A stretch of 64,000 nucleotides of DNA. Origin: Podarcis erhardii (taxonomy: Eukaryota). Both the position numbers and the translations under genes were made by a program. A model generated the notes under the pieces. That model was not told the DNA's origin, did not search any database, and saw nothing but the letters and a program-made list of their open reading frames with translations. Location: NCBI GenBank assembly GCA_964252035.1, contig OZ176200.1. The stretch is one strand, 5' to 3'. Numbering within the stretch: position 1 is the stretch's first letter; each line of letters opens with the position of its first letter. This document shows, piece by piece, positions 5,161-60,186 of the stretch.

Positions 5161-6602
5161 CCCAATTTTAAGACTCTGTGTTCCAGTGTACTCTTCTTTG
5201 CTTATAATTTCTCCTGAAGTTCATGAAACATTTCCCCAAGGGATTTATGACTGTGATGATATTATTATTATTATCATTATCATCCTTATTGAAGATGTTG
5301 CCTTGGTTTTCCTCCATTAAAAAAAAAATGTTCAAGGGTTCTCACATACTAATGTACATACAATATGATAAAAATAAACAGGAGATTAAAACGCTGCATA
5401 AAATAACCCAACAGCAAGCAGTAGGATTCAGTCAAATGCTGGGAAAGCTGTCAGCAGATAAAAATCATGAAGATGTTCTTAGCCAATTTCCCCAGGCAGA
5501 CATTCTATAAAGTGGGCACCACTGCAGAAATTGCCCTGCTTAGACAGATGATATGTTATTGTTCTGCTTTGTAAAGAACACTTTGTTATTCAATGGTCAC
5601 ATATTCTTATTGAAAATTGTGAGACGTGGGAGTGTTCTCTGAATATATTATAAAAGTATGCTAATGCTCATTGTTCCCCATTATGTTGTCCAAACGCCAT
5701 GTCACTGTTCCCACTGTGAGCCATCCACTCTCCATATTCTCTCTCCTTCCTCTTTCCATAGACAAATATTTCCGTGTGTGTTTAGGTATGAATATGTAAA
5801 TGGTCCCTTTCTGATAATTAGGCTGCTTACTGTGGACAGTAAGCCCAGATGAACACAGTGGTACTTAACTTCTGAGTGCGCCTGCAGAGGACTGCACTGC
5901 ATAACAGATAACATTGAGTTTATGGCGTTAGTACTTAGTTCTTAGTGAAACAAAGCACATTTCTGTGGAAATAATCTCCATTTAATTTTTCCTTGAAGGA
6001 AAAGCCACAGTGTATGGTCAGATGCAGTGCTATACAGTATTCCAAGTCTGGATTCTAGTCTTGCACCATTTTCCTATCCAAAACCCTCCTCTCCAATTAC
6101 ACTTTGCCTTCGTGTTCAATGCAACTAACTTTTGGGTAGGATTGTCTTTTTAAAAAAATAATAATATTTATTAACATTTTAAAGACTACAAAAGAAAGAA
6201 AAAGAGTTAAACAAAACAATACAATACAATACAAAAACACCACACAACACCACACAACACCAACACCATAATATTAAATTAACAAAACAAAATAAACACA
6301 ATTTAAAACACATCCAATAATTTCATTATCTTGTCTTTCATTCCCTTGTTTCAACGACCTCCTCACACCTCCCTTTTTGTATTCCACTTTAATTAACTGT
6401 TTCAGCAATTCCTTTCCATCTTCCTCTGTTTTCTGTCCTGTAATTTATCTTAACATATTCTAACCTTATTTTTTTCCTTTAATATATAATTGTCTTAACA
6501 TATTTTAACCTTATTTTCCCTTTAATACTCTAATAATCTATTTGTACTTAATTCCTTATAACATCTCTACTAAAGCCATATAACTCCTTTCCAACATTTT
6601 CC

Positions 6603-6735
6603 TAACACTCATTAATTTTACAATATTTTTATAAATAGTCTTTAAACTTTTTCCAATCTTCTTCCACCGACTCTTCTCCCTGGTCTCGGATTCTGCCAGT
6701 CATATCCGCCAATTCCATATAGTTCCATCAACCTG
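6603..6735 (-). pseudogene. C-terminal ~45 codons of L1/Tx1 ORF2
   Basis: Translates as YMELADMTGRIRDQGEESVEEDWKKFKDYL*KYCKINEC*, homologous to YAELDRLTGRIRNRRDQRFTEDWNKFTEYIKNIC in the ORF2 fragment at 58520-58891. Confidence 0.8.
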
Positions 6736-7531
6736 GTGATCTTCTGTCCGATGCTCTTAACTCTTTTCCAAGTCCCTTCTGCGAGTCTTTTTCATATTTA
6801 TACTTGAACTTTACTTTGTCTTCCACTGATCTTATTTTTATTTTCCTTCCTTTGAAGCTAAAGAGTAAATCTCGGGGAAACTCCCACCTAAAGATGATTT
6901 TATTCCTTCTCGACAGGGCAACCAAATCTCCGTAGTTAAATCTAAAATCCAAAAGGTATTTCAGAACGTCTTTCAAAATTTCCACTCTTAACTGTTGTTC
7001 TTCTAAGTTCTTCTGGTAGTTCCAACAGTCTCTTATTTTGTTCTTCTCTTTTTTCCCTCCTCTTCCAAGTCCAAAGGCCCTCACAGTTTTAATCTCTTCT
7101 TGACCCAAATCTCGGTCCCAAAAATCATCAAATTCCTGTGTGGGGAAATCTATCAAACTTTCCTTCTCGAGTTCAGGTAGGGTTCTGATCCTCAAAATCT
7201 GATTTTCTTTAGATTCAATCATAGCAGGCATCAACTTCATAGCAGGCATCAACTTATGGTCATCAAATTGCATCTGTAAGGCTGGGACTCTCTCTCTCTC
7301 CAATTGTGTTACTTTAGGTTCAACGGCAGTAACTTTCTCCCTAGCCTTCTCTGCAGTTTGCCATGTCAAAGTAGATTCCTGTATCGATTTCTGAATAGTT
7401 TCTGTATTTGTGTTCACTTTTTGTCCCAAATTATCGATTTTGGTAGTTACCACATCCACCTTTTTGTGAAGCTGTTCCAGTGAGTCACTTATCTTACATA
7501 ATAAAACCACTAAGGCCTCTTCTGTCGACAT
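6728..7531 (-). CDS. L1-type ORF1p-like protein (coiled coil + RRM/CTD-like), 267 aa from ATG MSTEE...
   Basis: Heptad-rich N-terminus (LEQLHKKVDVVTTKIDNLGQKVNTNTETIQ) and a C-terminal IIFRWEFPRDLLFSFKG motif like vertebrate L1 ORF1p. The true ATG at 7531 is supported by an aligned ATG in the nested relative; the track start at 7546 is a non-ATG extension. Confidence 0.7.
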   Translation of the reverse strand: MSTEEALVVLLCKISDSLEQLHKKVDVVTTKIDNLGQKVNTNTETIQKSIQESTLTWQTAEKAREKVTAVEPKVTQLERERVPALQMQFDDHKLMPAMKLMPAMIESKENQILRIRTLPELEKESLIDFPTQEFDDFWDRDLGQEEIKTVRAFGLGRGGKKEKNKIRDCWNYQKNLEEQQLRVEILKDVLKYLLDFRFNYGDLVALSRRNKIIFRWEFPRDLLFSFKGRKIKIRSVEDKVKFKYKYEKDSQKGLGKELRASDRRSPG

Positions 7532-8100
7532 TCTCAACCGATTCAAGGTCCCCAGAATCTCACAGCTTTTTATCTTGCAGCTGGAAATCCCCCCAGCTCA
7601 ACTCTTGTAACAGTTTCAAAGGCTTCCTCTAGAGGGAAACAGTTTCTATTTGTATTAGTCCTTTTAAACTCAATTCAAACAATAAAGTTAGTTTCAATTT
7701 TCTGTTACTTTTACTCCTTTTTAAACGCAGACGGAGACAGTGGAAACAATGTATTCCTTATTTAACTAACTGTCAGTGAACGTTCTAATCACGATCAATA
7801 AGCATTCCAGAACACGTCAGTCCTGTTGGCAGCCCGTTTCCAGGATCGGAGCGGTGGTATTTTAACTCTGTTCGCTCTCTCCTGCAGGTATACTCAGTCC
7901 AAAACTTCCCCCCCCTTCTCCTGCCACCAAGGGGAGGGTTAGTATTTTTTGCTGATGGGAATTTAGTCCTTTACAATAGGCTTTCCGAGGCTTCAGCTTG
8001 CATCCTCATTGCTTCAATCTATTTACAAAAGGGGAAGGTGGACTTCCTGTTTTAGACCTCCCCGTTTCGACACCAAATGAAGATGTTTTTTAAAAAATCC

Positions 8101-9311
8101 GGGACTTCCGGGTTAGCGCCATCGGCAATGGCGGAATTCCCCTGATCCAGAGGAACCTGTTCCGCGAAAATTGGGTCTTGCCACTGCGGCGAAGGCGGAG
8201 ACCCTTTAAAAATCCCAGGCGGAGGAAGCCTGGGAACGTGGGATTCGGCTGACACCAGGAACGCCCCCCCTACACGCAAGGAAACCCCTTTTTCGGGGAC
8301 CTGAAGCGACGTGGGGTGAGCGGCACAGTGTTTTGAATCGACCGCTATTTTTACAGAGTGAAGCTGCACAGCCGTTGCCGGAGAGCGCTGACTTTTTCCT
8401 GGGGACAATTGGACTCTAAACAAGTACCCGTGAGTAGAACGGAAAATTGGGCTAAGAAACACTTTAATTTGGCACTCAGCGGGAAGGTTCTAAACAGGAA
8501 GTCCGCCTTCCGCTTTTGTAAATAGTCTGAAGCAAAAATTGTGCAAGCCAAAGTCTGGAAAGTTGTACATAAAGGTTTTTAATTCCTCCTGTTTTGATCA
8601 TCTAAACCCCTCTTGGAAGCAGGAGTAAAGAGGGGAAATTTGATTGTTCAAGCCTGCAGGAGAGAGAGTAAAGAAAGATAAATTTCCACCGTCTCAGACC
8701 TGGGAACGGGGTGTCAGGGACGGAGATTTTTGGTGAAGTTCATTGACTATGAATGGAACATCTTTTGACAGTTAGTTGAAGAAGAGAAACAAATTGATTC
8801 CAATGTTGCCTTTTGCATTTAAAAGAAACAAAAAATCAGAAAAATGAAAGTAATTTTTCTTTGTTGGATCTGCTTTTAAAAGATGGATACAAATAGAAAT
8901 TGCCTCCTCTAGAGGGAGCTTGTTAAATTGTTGCTGGAGTCGTTCTGGGGATTTTGCAGCTGTGGAGATTAGGATCGTGGGACCAGACTGTGACCTTGAA
9001 CAAAAATGTATTTGGAAGAAGTTTTGGTGCTTGCTTTTTGCAAGACAAGCACTTTGTTGGAGCAGATGCATGAGAAGATGGATTTGATGACCGTTGCAGT
9101 CAGAAACTTTGGAAGATATGGAATATTGTGTTTTTATTGTTATTGTTGTATTGATTTTTAGGGGGGTTTTTTCTTTTTTTCTTTTTTTTCTTTTTTCCCT
9201 TTTTTAAGTATTGTTATATATGCTTTGAAAATTTTTTGTTGTTGTTGCTTTCTTCTTTTTTCTTTCTCTGTAATTTTTGAAACTTCTAATAAATATCATT
9301 TAAAAAAAAAA
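8101..9311 (+). mobile_element. 1.2-kb non-autonomous L1 derivative (5'UTR + ~37 ORF1 codons + 3' tail + polyA)
   Basis: Starts GGGACTTCCGGGTT and is colinear with the outer element's 5'UTR. ATG at 9006 gives MYLEEVLVLAFCKTSTLLEQMHEKMDL, matching MSTEEALVVLLCKISDSLEQLHKKVDV. AATAAA is followed by an A10 tail. It is flanked by AAGATGTTTTTTAAAAAATCC (8080-8100) and AAGATGTTTAAAAATCC (9310-9326). Confidence 0.8.
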
Positions 9312-9757
9312 GATGTTTAAAAATCCAATTCTCCACTCTACTCACAGGTAGTTGCTTTAAGATCAAATTGTCGACAGGAAAAAGTCAGCGCACTCCGGCA
9401 ACAGCTATGCGGCTTCGCTCCGTGGAAGAAACAGTCAATTCGAAGCACCGCGCCGCTCACCCCACGTCGCTCCGGATCCCCGAAACCGGGTTTCCCCGCA
9501 AGTAGGGGAGGCGCAAAAGGTGCCAGCTGAATCCCACGTTCACAGGCTTCACCCGCCTGTGATTTTTAGTGGGTCTCCGCCTTTGCCGTGGCGGCCAGAC
9601 CCAGATTTCCACGAGGCAAATTCCTCCCGATCAGAGGAATTCAGCCATTGCCGGAGGCACCAACCCGGAAGTCTAAAGGATTGCATTGTCACTGATTTTT
9701 CTGAACATCACTTGGAAATCCTAGCTGAAAGGCAGCATAGAAATATTTTAAAATAAA

Positions 9758-9965
9758 CTAGGGCAGCACCCCCTGCTCACAGAGCTCGCCAAGCCCCCTT
9801 ACCTGCCACTCGCTCCCTTTACATCCTGCTCAACCCCCTTCCTTTACACCTCACCAAACTCCCCCAGCCCCTCCCCTTACATATCTCAACCCCCTCCCCT
9901 ACACATCACCCAAACTGCACTCCCCATTCACTTGCAAATTGGCCAAACCATGCCCCACTTCCCAT
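9758..9965. repeat. C-rich degenerate repeat; terminus shared with 57330-57362
   Basis: TAGGGCAGCACCCCCTGCTCAC is the reverse complement of GTGAGCAGGGGTGCAGCCCCTA (near 57362), followed by imperfect CCCCTTACAC units. Confidence 0.4.
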
Positions 9966-10045
9966 GCAGATCTGCCAGTTCTCTCTATTGCCCCTCCTGA
10001 AGAGCGCAGAGCCTCATCAAGGAAGGGCTAAGGCTTTGAGCACCC

Positions 10046-10518
10046 TGTGGGACAGACCGAGAAGGAGGCGAAGCTGGAATCAGTGAGGCAAGACACAGCC
10101 TTGCCATCAAGAACCAGGCACCACTTCCTTAAGTGGGATCAGACACACCAGCTCAGGTGTGTGTTTCAATGTGTGGTGGACCCATCGGGTAAGAGAGTCT
10201 TGGAAATAAACTTGCCCTGCCTCATCTTTAACAGCTTGGCCCCCACAAAGTTGATGGGCATTCCCATTCAAATAGTGTGTGTGCACTGCGTCATGTGAAC
10301 AGTTATGTGGAGAGAGGCATACCTGGGCTTCCACAAGTTGGCTTATCCAAGTTGGCACCCCTGTCTGCATCTACTGCTTTGCTTGCATACCTAGGAATCA
10401 TGATTCCTGGATTCAGTGCTTCCTGCTGAGCTTATCCTGTTAGTAGCCTGAATAAAAACCTCTGCCTTACTCTCAAGTATGAGCAGCTGTCATTGTGTTT
10501 CGGGATGGCAGCATGACA
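10046..10518 (+). mobile_element. possible solo LTR
   Basis: TGTGGGACAG...CATGACA termini, AATAAAA at ~10451, and a purine-rich start like the other LTRs here. No TSD found. Confidence 0.4.
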
Positions 10519-12180
10519 AGAACAACTGTACTGTAAAAGCAATAAATCCCCTCCCCCACCAAAAAAAATTACAGCGTAAAAGAAAACAGAAATGGTGGTG
10601 TTTTCGTCAGTTGATGTTCAATTGAAGTTTCTGCAAGGAGATGTGATGCCAGGAAGCCGCAGGACACCTGCAGCTTTAGCAATAGGGGCCACTGTAATTA
10701 GGTAACACTGACCCTGGGTAACAGGCACTGCTGGGGAGGAAATAACTGCATAGCATGAGCTCGGGGCCTGAGAGACAACCTAAGGACTTGCGCTTGTCAT
10801 TAACCCCTCGTAATTGCTCTGTGCCCAGTGGGATTGTAAAAAGAAAATGAACCGCTGATAGAATGCGTGACAGTGAAAAGTTTTTTTTAAGGGCGGTGAC
10901 TTTCAGCTGCTACCTGCACTAGTATGAATGGTTAGATCCTCTCCATTCAGTTTCTAATAGCTGGTATGAAAATTTTATCTGATTTTCTACTTCACTCTTT
11001 TGAAATATTGAAGGTTGATAAATTATTAAACCAAATGTAAAATGTTACAAATGTGCGTACGTTTCGTAAAGAAGCCTGCTCAGGCAGGCTGCATAATGGG
11101 CCTGTTTCTGCCGTGCAAATAAGCTCAAATCAAGCTTCCTTTCTTTTCTCCATCTGTCTCAAGGTCTGACTACTTATTCATGAGACATCCAAGTGCTGTA
11201 TATTTCCTAAGCTTTCTGCTCCACCTCATTTGATCTCCTTCTCTTCAGCTCTCCAATACTTTTAATGAACTTTCAGGGACTCCGATTTTTTACTCCTTTT
11301 TGAAGCACTTGGAAATCAAGCACCAGTTGACTTTGGGAGGACTATCAGCATGTTCCTGTGTAATGCAGAAATGTAATATAAATATTGTGTTATGTTTTAT
11401 TAGATCTTATTTTTTGTGGTTGTGAGTTTTTAAACATTGTTTTCAGTGTGTTGTATTTTAAATTGTTGCAAGCTGCCTTGGGACCTTTGCGGGAAAGGCA
11501 AGTAATAAATGATGATGGTGATACCACTGTGCTATTTTGCTAATGTTGGAGAGCTGGCAGTCAACGACACCTTTCTGTTATATCCTTTGGTCCATAGAAG
11601 ACTCATAAAATTTACATGCATGTGGATGGAGCTTTGCACCCATATTGGGACACTACTGTCCTGTTTTATCCTTCCTCCACAATAATACAACTTAATTCCA
11701 GGTAAAACCATGATCTGATCTGAATCTCATGATTTGGACACACATTCCTCCAATGGCAGAAAAGGAAAATCACCCCAACTTACTGGAGTGCTCTAGCAGG
11801 TTACCTCCTCCCACTTCTTCATCTGCCATTGCAGCAGAATAGGAAGCAGAATAAGGCTGCAATCCTAGGCACATTTACCTGGAATTAAATCCCATTAAGC
11901 TCAGTGTGCCTTACATCCAGATAGACATACATAGCAATGTGTTGTGAAGGAGCAGGCTGGTGAGGCAAATGGATTGTTGTAGTTGTTGTTGCTGCTGCTG
12001 CTGTAAGGGCCAGCAAAAGAAATTCTGCAGCGCGGGGGACCACACTGTGAGCATCCCTCATGTCTTCTTCTGCGAACACAGCAGAACAAGAAATAGCTTA
12101 AAGGCTCAGTTCAAGAATGGTTCGTTGGTTTGTTCTTTCACTGCTGAAGCCAGCCAATGAAAGGTTATTGGGGGCAGATT

Positions 12181-19689: not shown

Positions 19690-19781
19690 GACAAAACAAA
19701 TTCCTTCCAGTAGCACCTTAAAGACCAACTAAGTCAGTTCTTGGTATGAGCTTTCGTGTGCATGCACACTTCTTCAGATAC
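19690..19781 (-). mobile_element. short Penelope-like element (PLE) remnant
   Basis: Near-identical reverse complement of 60052-60135 (TTAGTTGGTCTTTAAGGTGCTACTGGAAGGAATTT); contains a hammerhead motif. Confidence 0.7.
19744..19781 (-). ncRNA. minimal type I hammerhead ribozyme motif
   Basis: Minus strand: GUAU-CUGAAGA-A-GUGUG(CAUG)CACAC-GAAA-GC-UC-AUAC. Confidence 0.7.
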
Positions 19782-24528: not shown

Positions 24529-24658
24529 NNNNNNNNNNNNNNNNNNNNNNNNNNNNNNNNNNNNNNNNNNNNNNNNNNNNNNNNNNNNNNNNNNNNNNNN
24601 NNNNNNNNNNNNNNNNNNNNNNNNNNNNNNNNNNNNNNNNNNNNNNNNNNNNNNNNNN
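24529..24658. other. assembly gap (130 N)
   Basis: Run of N. Confidence 1.
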
Positions 24659-35149: not shown

Positions 35150-35520
35150 CAAAGGTAAAAGGTAAAGGACCCCTGACAGTTAAGTCCAGTCGCGAACGAC
35201 TCTGGGGTTGTGGCGCTCATCTCGCTTTACTGGCCGAGGGAGCTGACACTTGTCTGCAGACAGTTTTTCCGGATCATGTGGCCAGCATGACTAAGCCGCT
35301 TCTGGTGAAACCAGAGCAGTGCACGGAAACGCCTTTTACCTTCCCGCCAGAGTGGTACCTATTTATCTACTTGCACTTTGATGTGCTTTCAAACTGCTAG
35401 GTTGGCAGGAGCAGGGACCGAGCAACGGGAGCTCACTCCGTCATGGGGATTCGAACCGCCGACCTTCCGATTGGCAAGCCCAAGGCTCAGTGGTTTAGAC
35501 CACAGCACCAACCACATCCC
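35150..35520 (-). mobile_element. Sauria SINE (tRNA-derived), full length
   Basis: Minus-strand head GGGATGTGGTTGGTGCTGTGGTCTAAACC with B-box GGTTCGAATCC, and a (TTTACC)n tail. Confidence 0.9.
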
Positions 35521-41065: not shown

Positions 41066-41456
41066 TCATGAAGAGAGAGGTGTCAGATATTTTCAGGCAA
41101 TCATTACCCAAGCATATGATTACCAAGCATATGGAAGAACCATCTATAACACACACTCCCTAGATTTCAATGTGTGATCAGTGACAGTCCAAAGGGGGCC
41201 TGCATATATGCACATATACAAGGCACCTTCCGGGGCAATGATAACTCTGAACAACCAGAGTAGGGAGCCTCCTTCAGAATGTCACTAAAATAAAATATAT
41301 TCTGAAATAACACAAAGGTTACTGTAGTGTTGCTCTAGGTCCTTGTGGTACATGTTTGCATGTATGAGAGTAAAGCCCTGCTCACAAACTATTCATATAC
41401 TATATAGGCATCATGTCTTCTTCCTCAAAGGGATGCAGGTGGCGCTGTGGTCTAAA

Positions 41457-41759
41457 GTCATGACCGACTCTGGGGTTGTGGCACTCATCTCGCTTTATTG
41501 GCTGAGGAAGCCGGCGTACAGCTTCCGGGTCATGTGGTCAGCATGACTAAGCTGCTTCTGGTGAACCAGAGCAGCGCATGGAAACGCCATTTACCTTCCT
41601 GCTGGAGCAGTACCTATTTATCTACTTGCACTTTGATGTGCTTTCAAACTGCTAGGTTGGCAGGAGCAGGGACCGAGCAATGGGAGCTCACCCTGTTGCG
41701 ACCTTCTGATCGGCAAGTCCTAGGCTCTGTGGTTTAACCCACAGTGCCACCCGCGTCCC
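41457..41759 (-). mobile_element. Sauria SINE lacking its 3' tail; abuts an inverted SINE head at 41430-41456
   Basis: Body colinear with the 35150 and 53440 copies; head GGGACGCGGGTGGCACTGTGGGTTAAACC on the minus strand. Confidence 0.9.
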
Positions 41760-41868
41760 GTCCTGTTCATAGCCTATCCCTAAATAAGCGTAACAAGAGC
41801 ATGGCAGTTACTTTTCTGCCAAGAAGCCTTTCTCTTTCTGTAACTATTACTTGTGGCATGAGTTTTCC

Positions 41869-52120: not shown

Positions 52121-53439
52121 TGTTGTTGTTGGCTCCTAAATGTTCCCCCGGCACCTACTTCCGAAAGCCTGAGAAGCTTCTGTCCAGCTTAGGGAGGCAT
52201 AAGGCTCTGATTGGTCCAAGATCTGTTCTGCTATCCAGCTTTTGGAAGGAGGCAGAAGTGCTCCAGCATCCTGTCAGAGCCTTGGTGTCTACTTCACAAA
52301 GCCCAGGACATGTCTGTCTGCACGTGTGAGCATCATACATCCCTAAGCCAATGTCAAGGTATGAGGACAGCGTGCACACAATGTCCCGTCCTGCCCCCCA
52401 GTTGCTTTCTGGCCCTAACTGTTCCCTACAACAACAACAACAACAACGAAGTCCTGCACACCACTGGGAGTGGGGTTCAGTTACATACTGGCAAATTCAA
52501 GCTTCACAATTAAAGTTAATTTGGGGCTCCTGTTCAACAAACTAAAATCCACCATCACCACCTCCCGCCCAAAATTGCACTTTCTGCAATAAGAAAAGTG
52601 ATGGGGAAAATGTGCTGGAAAAGGTGGGATAGTATAAGCTCCCCCCACAAACACATTTGTATTTGCTTTTATTTGCTTTTGTTTTATTATGTGTTTTGTA
52701 TTCTCATTTTGTATTTTTATGTTACGAATTGCCCTGTGATCAGCGGATCGAGGGCAGTATGAAAATGTAATAAATAAATAAAGAGAATAATAATAATATG
52801 GATGCTCAATAAATAAATCCTCAATAAATAGGTCATCTGGAAGCACTTGTTCTTTCATAGTTTTCTTTCCTGGTAAAGGTGTACAAAATGACAGAACTGG
52901 GACAAGGTAGTTATGTACATATTCTGATGATTTCACACATATTTAAGTAAACAATTTGATTATGAAATGGAAACTTTGCCCTTCTCTTAAATGTATGCTG
53001 AGTATTTTATAAAATAAAACAAATATTGTATCTAAATTAAGAATTAAAAAGGATATAAACAAGGTGCATTTGATGGGCTGATACTCTTCTTCAAATGCAG
53101 AAGCATCATGTTTTAAGTGGAAACAAACTGTTTCTGAGCACATTGTGTTTTTAATGTTTAAATAATAATAATTAGCCATTATAGTTCACTGTTAAAGAAA
53201 GGGCACATTCACACAGTGAAGAAGAAGGGCAGACTAACTTTCGCTAGATGACTCTTACATAATTTTATTTCACAAAATTTATACACCAGTTGATTACAAA
53301 AAACCGAAAACAAAACCTTAAAGCGGATTACAAAAAGATAAAACAATAACATTTTGAAGAATTCACAACCCTACTTTAAAACATACAAAGGTTAAAATAC
53401 TAAAACAGATTAAAATTACCCAAAATAACTTCTGGGTAA

Positions 53440-53795
53440 AAGGTAAAGGTAAAGGGACCCCTGACCATTAGGTCCAGTTGTGACCGACTCTGGGGTTGCA
53501 GCGCTCATCTCACTTTATTGGCTGAGGGAGCCGGCGTACAGCTTCCGGGTCATGTGGCCAGCATGACTAAGCCACTTCTGGTGAACCAGAGCAACGCACA
53601 GAAACGCCGTTTACCTTCCCACTGGAGCGGTACCTATTTATCTACTTGCACTTTGACATGCTTTCGAACTGCTAGGTTGGCAGGAGCAGGGACTGAGCAA
53701 CAGGAGCTCACCCCGTCGCGGGGATTCAAACCTCTGACCTTCTGATCTGCAAGTCCTAGGCTCTGTGGTTTAACCCACAGCGCCACCCACATCCC
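53440..53795 (-). mobile_element. Sauria SINE, full length
   Basis: Head, B box and (TTTACC)n tail; 16-bp TSD AATAACTTCTGGGTAA (53424-53439) / AACAACTTCTGGGTAA (53796-53811). Confidence 0.92.
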
Positions 53796-53982
53796 AACAA
53801 CTTCTGGGTAAGTTTGTCTAAACAAGAATGTTTTTAGCAGGTGCTGAAAAGAGTGAAGTGAAGGCATCTGATTGATCTCAATAGGCAGGGAGTTCCAAAG
53901 TGATCTTATCAGTTTGGAATGGGTATTATATGGCACCTGGAGTAGCACCAGTTCTGCCAATTGAAGCAGTCAAGTGTGCATA

Positions 53983-55066
53983 CCGTATTTTTCGCCCCAT
54001 AGGACGCACCGGCCCATAGGACGCACCTAGTTTTGGGGGGGGGGAAATCAAGGAAAAAAATTTGATTCCCCCCCCCCCAGCCTGCAGAGGCTTTGCACAG
54101 CCATCCCCAAGCTAGAAGAGGGAGATGGAGCGCTCCATCTCCCTCTTCTGCCTTCAGGGACAGCCTCCCTAGCCTCCGTGGGGCAGCAGCTTGCCCCGCT
54201 GTCCCCCGAGCTTGTGGGGCTGGCGGTGGGGAGAAGCAAGCAAGCTTCTCCCCACGCCAGCCTCCAAACCAGGTCGGGGAATAGCGGGATGGCGGCGCTC
54301 CGCCTCCCCGCTGTCCCCCGAGCTTGTGGGGCTGGCTGTGGGGAGAAGCTTGCTTGCTTCTCCCCACCGCCAGCCCCCAAACCAGGTCGAGGAATAGAGG
54401 GATGGCGGCGCTCCGCCTCCTCGCTGTCCCCCGAGCTTGTGGGGCTGGCTGTGGGGAGAGGCTTGTTTGCTTCTCCCCACGCCAGCCCCCAAACCAGGTC
54501 GGGGAATAGCGGGATGGCGGCGCTCCACCTCCCCGCTGTCCCCCGAGCTTATGGGGCATGCTGTAGGGAGAAGCTTGCTTGCTTCTCCCCACCGCCAGCC
54601 TCCAGACCAGGTAGGGGAATAGCGGGATGGCAGCGCTCCGCCTTCCCGCTGTCCCCCAGCTTGTGGGGCTGGCTGTGGGGAGAAGCTTGCTTGCTTCTCC
54701 CCACTGCCAGCCTCCAAACCAGGTCGGGGAATAGCGGGATGACGGCGCTCCGCCTCCCCGCTGTCCCCCGAGCTTGTGGGGCTGCCCGATATCTGCTCGA
54801 AGCCGGGGTGCGCTCCGGAGCGCGCCCCATGCTTCGCGCTGCAGGCTGCCGCCCGCAAGCCTTGCGAGCCTGGTGGGCACTGCCGCGGGCTCCCAAAGCT
54901 TGCGGATAGCTTCCTGAAGCCTGAAGAGCGAGAGGGGTCGGTGCGCACCGACGCCTCTCGCTCTCCAGGCTTCAGCGAAAGCCTGCATTCGCCCCATAGG
55001 ACGCACACACATTTCCCCTTCATTTTTGGAGGAGGAAAAGTGCGTCCTATAGGGCGAAAAATACGG
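53983..55066. mobile_element. Tc2/pogo-like non-autonomous DNA transposon (1084 bp) with internal GC-rich tandem repeat
   Basis: 27-bp TIR CCGTATTTTTCGCCC(C/T)ATAGGACGCAC and TA TSD at 53981-53982 and 55067-55068. CCGTA termini are typical of the Tc2 group. Confidence 0.88.
54198..54782. repeat. tandem repeat, 5 full units of 112/113 bp plus a partial sixth
   Basis: GCTGTCCCCC unit starts at 54198, 54310, 54423, 54535, 54648 and 54760. Confidence 0.95.
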
Positions 55067-56197
55067 TATATGGGTTGAGGCGATCTCTCAGGCAAGCTGG
55101 TCCCAAGTTGTTAAGGCCTTTATATGCTAATAGTAACACCTTGAACTTGTCACGGTAGCAAATCAGCAACCAGTGCAGATCTCTGACCGCAGGTGTTATA
55201 TTCTCACAAAGCTGTCGGAATCAGTCCGTGCAGTGATTTGCAGATGCTGATGAATGAGATGATGCCTTTGCTTCTGTTTCAAACCACAGGCTGCTATGGA
55301 AGTCTTTCCCAATTGTTGGCATGTAATTCCTAAGATCTTCCACTTGGTGTCCTCATTTACTCTCTTTAGAAATGGGGGAATGGGGAATTCTTTTTTTATA
55401 TCTATTTAGTTTAAGGAAAGCTGCATTTGAGCAGCTGGATGCCACAAGTTTGCTCAGGGTGGCCAGATGCAACAGTGTTTTCTGCCCAGTTTGTGAATCT
55501 AGAACACGATCCAAGAAAGTTAAGCACTTCCAGGTCTGATTGATTTCAATGGGAAAGCTTAAAATATGCTTGCAGTTCCCTTGCTGAAATCACTGGGACT
55601 TCAAAGCTGGAATCCTATACACACTTGCCTGGGGGTAGGGCTGGGTAGATTTTGGTTTCACTCATTCTTTTCTTCACAGTTCCACATCATTTTGCAATTA
55701 CTTTAAAAAATATCCTCCTAAAAATTTAAAAGCAAATAAACAAACCAATTTTAACAAGGAGGAATAACAGAGATGGGCACAACACAGAAGCTAACACCAA
55801 AAATCTAACACATCACAGCCTTTCCAAACTCCTCTCTCACTGCACTCAAACCTTGTTTTAAAATGCCACTTCCCTCCTTCAGCATCACCCCCTCCTCATT
55901 CTACTCCAACCTGTTTAAAACAGTCAGTTTCCCCCTCTTATTGTTTCCCCATCCCTCCTTTACTTTGCCCTTGTTTAAAGTCACACATTTCCTCAATGTA
56001 CCTCCACTCAGCTTTACTTAAACTTCTGCTGTTGTTTGAAACAGCCATTTTTTTCCTTTCATTGTCTCTAGCTTTTTGCCGTACTCAAACATCTCACGCT
56101 TCCATTCTTCATGGGAAAACCTCAAATTTTCCATAGTACCTTCACACAATGGATTTCATTCTTGGTACCATGTGTTGTCCTCAACATAAAACTTCAA

Positions 56198-60051: not shown

Positions 60052-60089
60052 GTATCTGAAGAAGTGTGCATGCACACGAAAGCTCATAC
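60052..60089 (+). ncRNA. minimal type I hammerhead ribozyme motif
   Basis: GUAU-CUGAAGA-A-GUGUG(CAUG)CACAC-GAAA-GC-UC-AUAC; predicted cleavage 3' of C60085. Confidence 0.7.
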
Positions 60090-60186
60090 CTAGAACTAAC
60101 TTAGTTGGTCTTTAAGGTGCTACTGGAAGGAATTTTTTTATTTTGTTTTGACTATGGCAGACCAACACGGCTACCTATCTGTAACT
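60052..60186 (+). mobile_element. short Penelope-like element remnant
   Basis: Matches 19690-19781 in reverse complement; flanked by a duplicated AACTGCCAATTTATGA (60025-60040, 60183-60198). Confidence 0.7.

What the first reader, a model, noticed from the sequence alone, without database searches (positions are those of the whole stretch)
8101..9311. 1.2-kb mini-L1 that retrotransposed with both ends intact but almost no coding capacity
Seen: it is colinear with the outer element from the GACTTCCGGG start through the 5'UTR into ORF1, then switches after ~37 codons (MYLEEVLVLAFCK... vs MSTEEALVVLLCK...) to a T-rich 3'UTR, AATAAA and A10. It is flanked by a target duplication differing only in homopolymer lengths. 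Inference: the full 5' end, polyA and TSD suggest it moved as an already-deleted RNA, a SINE-like Pol II parasite of L1. With the outer element and the ORF2 fragments, the window appears to hold three steps of a reduction series.
Basis: partly seen in the sequence, partly recalled or inferred. Interest (0 to 1): 0.72.

Follow-up and report, generated by a model that had tools for sequence, protein, structure and literature searches.

The report
Internally deleted lizard L1-derived retroposon copy
This is a real, young 1.2-kb insertion in a lizard genome: a LINE-1-derived jumping gene that kept its front and tail ends but lost nearly all its coding sequence. I could not test whether it spreads as a family of its own.

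Summary
Window 8101-9311 (+) is a complete retroposed unit. It has the family 5' terminus (GACTTCCGGGTT at 8103, preceded by two extra G), a full 903-nt 5'UTR with a CpG-rich first 350 nt, 36 codons of ORF1, a 197-nt T-rich tail, AATAAA and an A-run. A 17/21-nt target duplication flanks it.

It lies antisense inside the 5'UTR of a 2.3-kb ORF1-only "half-L1" on the minus strand, not inside a full L1. Contigs from other copies of that host family run through the site with one copy of the duplicated sequence, so the insertion and its duplication are real.

The ORF1 stub is of the shortened half-L1 type. The mini is only 69-79% identical to its host, so it did not derive from this host copy.

Intact ends plus a target duplication are equally expected after a later genomic deletion. 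The young age of the locus makes a later deletion less likely, but I found no second copy sharing the 9113/9114 junction.

This scan has already noted short non-coding L1 derivatives elsewhere in this genome (s1-259098, s1-268875, s1-274856). Whether they are the same family is unknown. Ordinary to mildly interesting.

The parts
8080..8100 (.). 5' copy of the target-site duplication (21 nt, T6/A6 version)
   Evidence: it matches 9311-9327 apart from two homopolymer lengths. Contigs of other host-family copies carry one copy of it.
8101..8102 (+). Two extra G ahead of the family 5' terminus
   Evidence: the outer element starts directly with GACTTCCGGGTT. An X6 contig with a different flank also starts to align at 8103 (record 26). 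Taking the extra G as copied from an RNA cap is inference.
8103..9005 (+). Complete 5'UTR (903 nt). The first ~350 nt are CpG-rich and are the likely internal Pol II promoter.
   Evidence: it is colinear with the 911-nt 5'UTR of the outer element, at 79% then 69% identity; the first 350 nt have GC 56% and CpG observed/expected 0.91. Promoter function is inferred.
9006..9113 (+). ORF1 remnant: start codon plus 35 codons of the coiled-coil N-terminus. The open frame runs on to a stop at 9159-9161.
   Evidence: gap-free alignment to the outer ORF1 N-terminus, 16 of 37 identical. Against the full ORF1 protein P0001 it needs a 14-residue gap.
9111..9118 (+). Deletion junction (between 9113 and 9114)
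   Evidence: homology to ORF1 ends here. Downstream sequence is colinear only with the last ~155 nt of the outer 3'UTR.
9114..9301 (+). T-rich 3'UTR remnant with a short T/C tandem array (9167-9205) and AATAAA at 9288-9293
9302..9311 (+). A-run (8-10 A). The last two A may belong to the duplication.
9311..9327 (.). 3' copy of the target-site duplication (17 nt, T3/A5 version, same as in copies lacking the insert)
   Evidence: joint 8069 to 9310 in X2 and X6.
6147..8079 (-). Host element, downstream part: rest of the 5'UTR, ORF1 (7531-6728, 267 aa), ORF2 C-terminal tip, 3'UTR, AATAAA and short A tail. It is a half-L1.
9328..9673 (-). Host element, first ~346 nt of its 5'UTR
   Evidence: The orthologous empty site for the whole host element is seen in X2 (record 17).

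Best explanation
The stretch is one young, end-to-end copy of an internally deleted derivative of the lacertid half-L1 (L1-derived, ORF1-only) lineage. It keeps the whole 5'UTR with its CpG-rich promoter region, 36 codons of ORF1, and the last ~200 nt of the 3'UTR with the polyadenylation signal.

It was most likely transcribed by Pol II from its own 5'UTR, or from that of its parent, then polyadenylated. L1 proteins supplied in trans then copied it into a TG|AAGA site (TT|AAGA in sister copies) by target-primed reverse transcription. That left a 17-nt duplication.

The ~1.1-kb deletion, measured against a half-L1, most likely existed in the RNA or arose during reverse transcription, not later in the genome.

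Shown: the anatomy, the insertion, the duplication, the lack of coding capacity, the absence of a Pol III head, and the young age of the locus. Inferred: Pol II transcription, trans-mobilisation, and the timing of the deletion.
For: - Complete, colinear 5'UTR starting at the same base as the host element.
- CpG observed/expected of 0.91 in the first 350 nt.
- ORF1 stub homologous to the shortened half-L1 ORF1. The host ORF1 is 49% identical to a Podarcis protein that its source names 'L1 transposable element RRM domain-containing'. That protein's nearest Atlas structure clusters are LINE-1 ORF1 / Transposase_22 types, TM 0.52-0.63.
- The 3' ends are homologous and carry AATAAA plus an A-run.
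- The duplication is validated by host-family contigs that lack the insert.
- No tRNA or Rfam head.
- Age bound: the host element is absent at the orthologous site in X2, whose flanks differ by ~2-3%. It is present in X1 (~0.2%) and X6 (~1.3%) (table 8). The nested mini is younger still, which leaves little time for a deletion of 1 kb or more.
- Both mini-specific parts, 8606-9106 and 9209-9273, are present well above unique depth in X2, which lacks this locus. So both parts belong to multi-copy families (tables 2 and 4).
- Unchecked notes of this scan report other short non-coding L1 derivatives in this genome.
Against: - No second copy with the 9113/9114 junction was seen. No listed contig bridges it, and the reads tool skipped the low-complexity stretch 9123-9208 next to it.
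- The junction-spanning 51-aa frame has no relatives.
- The 3' part is roughly 5-20 times less abundant than the 5' part in summed contig depth. The tool says this depth is not a copy number. Taken at face value, most elements with this 5' part have another tail.
- The argument against a later deletion rests on general rates recalled from knowledge, not on a measurement.
Confidence: 0.6

Rival explanations
1. Post-insertion deletion. A complete half-L1 (or full L1) copy of the mini's subfamily inserted here with its duplication. It later lost ~1.1 kb (or ~5 kb) of internal sequence through a genomic deletion.
For: Intact ends and a duplication are fully compatible with this. No other copy with the junction was found. 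The parent-type 5' part is abundant, hundreds of unique-depth equivalents in summed contig depth (the tool warns this is not a copy number), so some damaged copies are expected.
Against: The locus is young: the host element is absent from X2 and its flanks are ~1.3% or less diverged from the carriers. Deletions over 1 kb within a 2-6 kb target in that time are rare, from general knowledge and not measured here. The genome is reported to hold several mobile short L1 derivatives (unchecked notes).
Confidence: 0.25
2. A self-propagating family of short internally deleted elements. A deleted master copy is transcribed from its own 5'UTR, and many copies share the junction.
For: The promoter region is complete and still CpG-rich. 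The conserved 3' end is retained. Both halves are multi-copy in a species that lacks this locus. Notes describe similar non-coding families in this genome (s1-259098).
Against: No junction-sharing copy was observed. The 3' half is much rarer than the 5' half. This copy differs from the majority of related contigs at 9 or more sites (table 3), so it is not itself a consensus master.
Confidence: 0.35
3. SpIRE-like origin. A spliced parent RNA, with a donor in ORF1 and an acceptor in the 3'UTR, was retrotransposed once.
For: Spliced L1 RNAs are known to retrotranspose in humans (PMC5860796). A GT lies three bases beyond the position in the outer element that is homologous to the junction.
Against: With the outer element as a proxy for the parent, the bases just after the junction homologue (7420-7419) are AA, not GT. 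The bases before the 3' resumption (6304-6303) are AA, not AG. The true parent was not available.
Confidence: 0.07

Closest known systems
HAL1 (half-L1) elements of mammals (Smit 1999; Bao and Jurka 2010, as cited in PMC5753468)
   Same: It is L1-derived and non-autonomous, keeps L1-type 5' and 3' ends and has no ORF2. The mini's ORF1 stub and its host element belong to such a lineage in lacertid lizards.
   Different: HAL1 encodes ORF1p. The mini keeps only 36 codons and encodes no functional protein. It is reptilian, not mammalian.
SIDEs, short internally deleted elements of non-LTR retrotransposons (R2 SIDEs, PMC3414825; Persaeus/CR1, PMC6740152)
   Same: Both termini of the parent are retained, the middle is deleted, there is no Pol III head, and it depends on the parent's proteins.
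   Different: The SIDEs named in these papers come from R2, R1/R2 hybrids and CR1 (Persaeus, Ag-Sponge) or are the trypanosome element TbRIME. They are defined as multi-copy families with shared breakpoints. Here only one copy is documented and the parent is of the L1 lineage.
SpIREs, spliced integrated retrotransposed L1 elements of humans (PMC5860796)
   Same: A full-length 5' end, an internal deletion present at integration, and normal L1 hallmarks.
   Different: SpIRE deletions are bounded by splice donor and acceptor sites and lie in the 5'UTR or ORF1. No GT...AG is seen here by proxy, and the deletion removes ORF1 through most of the 3'UTR.
Non-coding and short L1-derived retroposons noted by this scan in the same genome (s1-259098, 1675 bp; s1-274856, 1.66 kb; s1-268875, 234 bp)
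   Same: An L1-type front end and tail, little or no coding sequence, complete with duplications.
   Different: The lengths differ (1.2 kb here). Sequence relationship could not be checked, and the notes themselves are unverified.

Membership tests
L1-lineage retroposon | Integration hallmarks: poly(A) signal and tail, a 7-20 nt target duplication, and a TT|AAAA-like nick site | tested here: met
   AATAAA at 9288-9293 and an A-run at 9302-9311. The 17/21-nt duplication is confirmed by insert-free host-family contigs. The site is TG|AAGA here and TT|AAGA in those contigs.
L1-lineage retroposon | Coding sequence homologous to L1 ORF1p or ORF2p | tested here: inconclusive
   The stub is homologous to the host ORF1. 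The host ORF1 is 49% identical to a Podarcis protein named as an L1 RRM-domain protein, and the Atlas structure neighbours of that protein are LINE-1 ORF1 / Transposase_22 clusters. Against this, there is no Pfam hit and no PDB sequence hit, and my own model was too poor to search (pLDDT 44).
HAL1 / half-L1 | Encodes an ORF1 protein but no ORF2 | tested here: not met
   Only 36 ORF1 codons remain. The 51-aa frame has no relatives.
SIDE (short internally deleted LINE derivative) | Both termini colinear with the parent and the interior deleted | tested here: met
   against a related half-L1. The true parent was not in hand.
SIDE (short internally deleted LINE derivative) | Several independent copies sharing the same breakpoint | not testable with these tools
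The single read-laying run listed no contig across 9113/9114 and skipped 9123-9208. No lizard genome collection is searchable here.
SpIRE | Deletion bounded by a splice donor GT and an acceptor AG in the parent | tested here: inconclusive
   It is not met with the outer element as proxy, but the proxy is 21-31% divergent from the mini.
SINE | A head derived from tRNA, 7SL or 5S with an internal Pol III promoter | tested here: not met
   No tRNA and no Rfam family at E of 1 or below. The head is a 903-nt L1-type 5'UTR.

The most novel reading that the evidence does not exclude
The mini is one member of an active, non-coding, Pol II-transcribed L1 SIDE family in lacertid lizards. Such an element would carry only the L1 promoter/5'UTR and the last ~200 nt of the 3'UTR. 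It would be a second reduction step from half-L1 and would be mobilised efficiently in trans despite L1 cis-preference.
Probability: 0.35. Interest if true: 0.5.

Novelty: new member of a known kind. Interest (0 to 1): 0.3.

Why it matters
One paper calls internally deleted families of non-LTR retrotransposons rare (PMC6740152). From general knowledge, mammalian L1 strongly prefers to copy the RNA that encoded its proteins.

Suppose short L1 derivatives that keep only the promoter and the tail really propagate in lizards. They would then mark the minimal cis elements that a lizard L1 needs for transcription and for recognition by its reverse transcriptase. They would also show a host-parasite layer (L1, then half-L1, then a non-coding mini) that is absent or minor in mammals.

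As a single copy of undetermined history, it is an ordinary damaged retroposon.

Tried and rejected
- **Junction frame, protein searches.** The 51-aa junction-spanning frame had no candidates in the word-indexed search and no hits in the full representative library. A blank is weak evidence, because such a short frame is rarely called as a gene.
- **Junction DNA in metagenomes.** An exact 26-nt junction pattern gave no match in metagenome contigs, as expected for lizard DNA.
- **Fetching other lizard DNA.** So neither parent elements nor other lizard DNA could be read.
- **This scan's notes by sequence.** The search of earlier findings by sequence was blank, which means nothing here.
- **The 9-nt match.** ATATGGAAT at the junction also occurs at the start of the host's ORF2 tip, which might hint at two deletions or a template jump. 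Rejected: 16% of Markov-shuffled tails give a match that long.
- **Twin priming or inverted duplication.** This might explain the inverted 141-nt arms (I1). Rejected: the arms are 79% alike and belong to two different elements, each with its own ends.
- **RNA evidence.** Run X15 is only guessed to be RNA, and its coverage follows DNA copy number, so I make no claim about expression.
- **Structure prediction.** The model of the full ORF1 relative was too poor for a fold search (mean pLDDT 44 with three sequences).
- **RT or EN domains elsewhere in the window.** None found.
- **Third protein search.** I did not use it. No callable frame spans the junction, so it could not have tested the claim.

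Full report
**Anatomy**

The stretch 8101-9311 reads, on the + strand, as a compact retroposon.
- It begins with two G (8101-8102), followed by GACTTCCGGGTT at 8103.
- That 12-mer occurs only twice in the 64-kb window, against 0.06 expected by chance. The other site is the 5' end of a second element on the minus strand at 9673.
- From 8103 to 9005 runs a 903-nt untranslated leader.
- An ATG at 9006 opens a 51-codon frame.
- After 9113 the sequence turns T-rich, with a short T/C tandem array at 9167-9205.
- It carries AATAAA at 9288-9293 and ends in an A-run at 9302-9311.
- The flanks repeat each other: 8080-8100 (21 nt) and 9311-9327 (17 nt). They differ only in a T run (6 against 3) and an A run (6 against 5).

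**The host element**

The 'outer element' is on the opposite strand and is not a full L1. Read on the minus strand it starts at 9673 and runs to about 6147.
- Without the insert it is about 2.3 kb.
- It has a 911-nt leader and a 267-codon ORF1 (7531-6728).
- It also has a short ORF2 C-terminal tip, a 3'UTR, AATAAA and a short A tail.
- The same scan had noted it as a half-L1 (s1-263167).

The mini aligns to it colinearly. Positions 3-350 match 9673-9325 at 78.9%, and positions 353-862 match 8092-7578 at 69.3%. The break between the two blocks is simply the place where the mini itself interrupts the host. When the mini and one copy of the duplication are removed, the host's leader aligns through the site without an extra gap.

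**The junction**

The first 37 residues of the mini's frame align without gaps to the host ORF1 N-terminus, with 16 identical.
- By my reading, real homology ends after the conserved N-x-G-x motif, that is after codon 36 (9113/9114).
- The same residues need a 14-residue gap against the full-size Podarcis ORF1 protein P0001.
- Like the host ORF1, the stub starts at what is an internal methionine of P0001.
- So the stub is of the shortened half-L1 type, and the mini's parent was more likely a half-L1 than a full L1.

Downstream of the junction, short exact matches are colinear only with the last ~155 nt of the host 3'UTR. The final ~90 nt align at about 70%, with the best conservation around the poly(A) signal. 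Measured against a half-L1, about 1.1 kb is missing: ORF1 codons 37 to the end, the ORF2 tip and the first ~320 nt of the 3'UTR.

**Is the insertion real?**

I laid contigs of three deep genome runs and one small run on 5600-10600. Single-copy flanks have word depth of about 100 (X1), 65 (X2) and 20 (X6).
- Contigs in X2 and X6 join 8069 directly to 9310, with ten letters between that are a variant of 8070-8079. They read a single copy of the duplicated sequence in the T3/A5 form.
- These are other copies of the host family that lack the mini. They serve as paralogous empty sites and confirm the duplication.
- In them the base before the duplication is T, giving TT|AAGA, a common variant of the L1 endonuclease site. 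This copy has TG|AAGA.
- One X6 contig with an unrelated 64-nt flank starts to align at 8103. That fits 8103 as the family's true 5' end, with 8101-8102 as extra G.

**Age**

An X2 contig of 1,210 nt joins 6140 to 9673, at the depth of single-copy DNA. In that organism the whole host element is absent at the orthologous site (record 17).
- X1 (flanks ~0.2% different) and X6 (~1.3%) carry the host's ends next to the same flanks. X2's flanks differ by ~2-3%.
- So the host element inserted recently, and the nested mini is most likely younger still.
- The first 350 nt of both elements keep GC 56% and CpG observed/expected of 0.91-0.94, falling to 0.39-0.53 further in. That pattern fits a CpG-island-like promoter that has not decayed.

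**Copy number of the parts**

X2 lacks this locus, yet it holds contigs at least 90% like the mini.
- Summed depth is about 56,000-70,000 over 8606-9106 and about 9,000 over 9107-9273, against 65 for unique DNA (tables 2 and 4).
- The tool warns that these sums are not copy numbers.
- They do show that both the mini-specific leader half and the mini-type tail belong to multi-copy families, and that the tail is far rarer than the leader.
- Most related contigs differ from this copy at nine or more listed sites (table 3), so this copy is not a consensus master.

**What could not be shown**

That does not follow, because a complete copy that later lost its middle has the same ends and the same duplication. 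Only independent copies with the same junction can decide the matter.
- No listed contig crosses 9113/9114. Contigs of repeats are 100-300 nt long, and the tool skipped the low-complexity stretch 9123-9208 right next to the junction.
- The 51-aa frame that spans the junction has no relatives in either protein library.
- The junction 26-mer is absent from metagenome contigs.
- The timing of the deletion therefore rests on indirect argument. The locus is young, and from general knowledge (not measured here) kilobase deletions within a few kilobases are rare over ~1% divergence. Unchecked notes of this scan describe several short or non-coding L1 derivatives with complete ends in this genome.
- My estimates are about 0.6 that the deletion was present at integration, about 0.35 for a propagating family (a subset of the 0.6), and about 0.25 for a later genomic deletion.

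**Other mechanisms considered**

- Splicing, as in human SpIREs (PMC5860796), finds no GT...AG at the borders when the host element serves as a proxy for the parent. The proxy is too divergent to be decisive.
- A 9-nt match between the junction and the start of the host's ORF2 tip is not significant (p about 0.16).
- Twin priming is excluded, because the two inverted elements are only 69-79% alike and each has its own ends.
- A Pol III SINE-type head is absent.

**L1 identity**

- Pfam and PDB sequence searches do not recognise the ORF1 proteins.
- My own structure model was too poor to search.
- The link to L1 rests on three things. The source's name for P0001 is 'L1 transposable element RRM domain-containing'. 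P0001's Atlas structure neighbours are LINE-1 ORF1 / Transposase_22 clusters with TM 0.52-0.63. The integration hallmarks are of the L1 type.
- The organism is a lacertid lizard, judging from the Podarcis hits and the scan's notes.

**Comparison and verdict**

- The element works like a short internally deleted LINE derivative (SIDE; PMC3414825, PMC6740152). It descends from a HAL1-like lineage (PMC5753468).
- It is not a HAL1, because it has no ORF1 protein, and it is not a SINE.
- SIDE membership needs shared breakpoints in several copies, which I could not test.
- The 'three-step reduction series' is plausible only at lineage level. The mini did not derive from this host copy, and I found no ORF2 fragments in the window.
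- It is a real but fairly ordinary feature. Its interest depends on a genome-wide count of copies that share the junction.

Noticed in passing
window 6147-9673 (minus strand): The host half-L1 is absent at the orthologous site in run X2: a 1,210-nt contig joins 6140 to 9673 at single-copy depth. It is present in X1 and X6. It is therefore a young, lineage-specific or polymorphic insertion.
   Followed up: partly
window 6602-6768: The ORF2 C-terminal tip of the host element is by far the most abundant stretch, with summed contig depth of ~3.8 million against ~100 for unique DNA in X1. At 6723, 37-70 contigs per genome run continue with a different sequence, which marks where complete L1 elements diverge from the half-L1.
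   Followed up: partly
protein P0003 (Podarcis raffonei LOC128406054): The first ~190 residues are ORF1-like. The rest is unrelated to ORF1 and looks to me like an L1 ORF2 segment. If so, this annotated protein probably comes from another internally deleted L1 copy.
   Followed up: no
window 54194-54755: A tandem array of ~112-nt units (four or more copies, 65-91% alike) lies in the most GC-rich part of the window (54%). Long open frames on both strands (53909-55095) have no Pfam match.
   Followed up: no
window 35151-35520, 41419-41775, 53439-53795: Three copies of a ~300-nt repeat (63-90% alike) that looks like a squamate SINE. That identification is from memory and was not tested.
   Followed up: no
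window 10109-10442: Another high-copy repeat (summed depth ~20,000-120,000 against ~100 unique in X1) lies just beyond the host element's 5' flank.
   Followed up: no
window 19694-19781 and 60052-60139: An 88-nt inverted repeat, 97% complementary, with its arms 40 kb apart. It is probably two young copies of one repeat family.
   Followed up: no
window 24529-24658: A run of 130 N (assembly gap or masked). I left it untouched.
   Followed up: no
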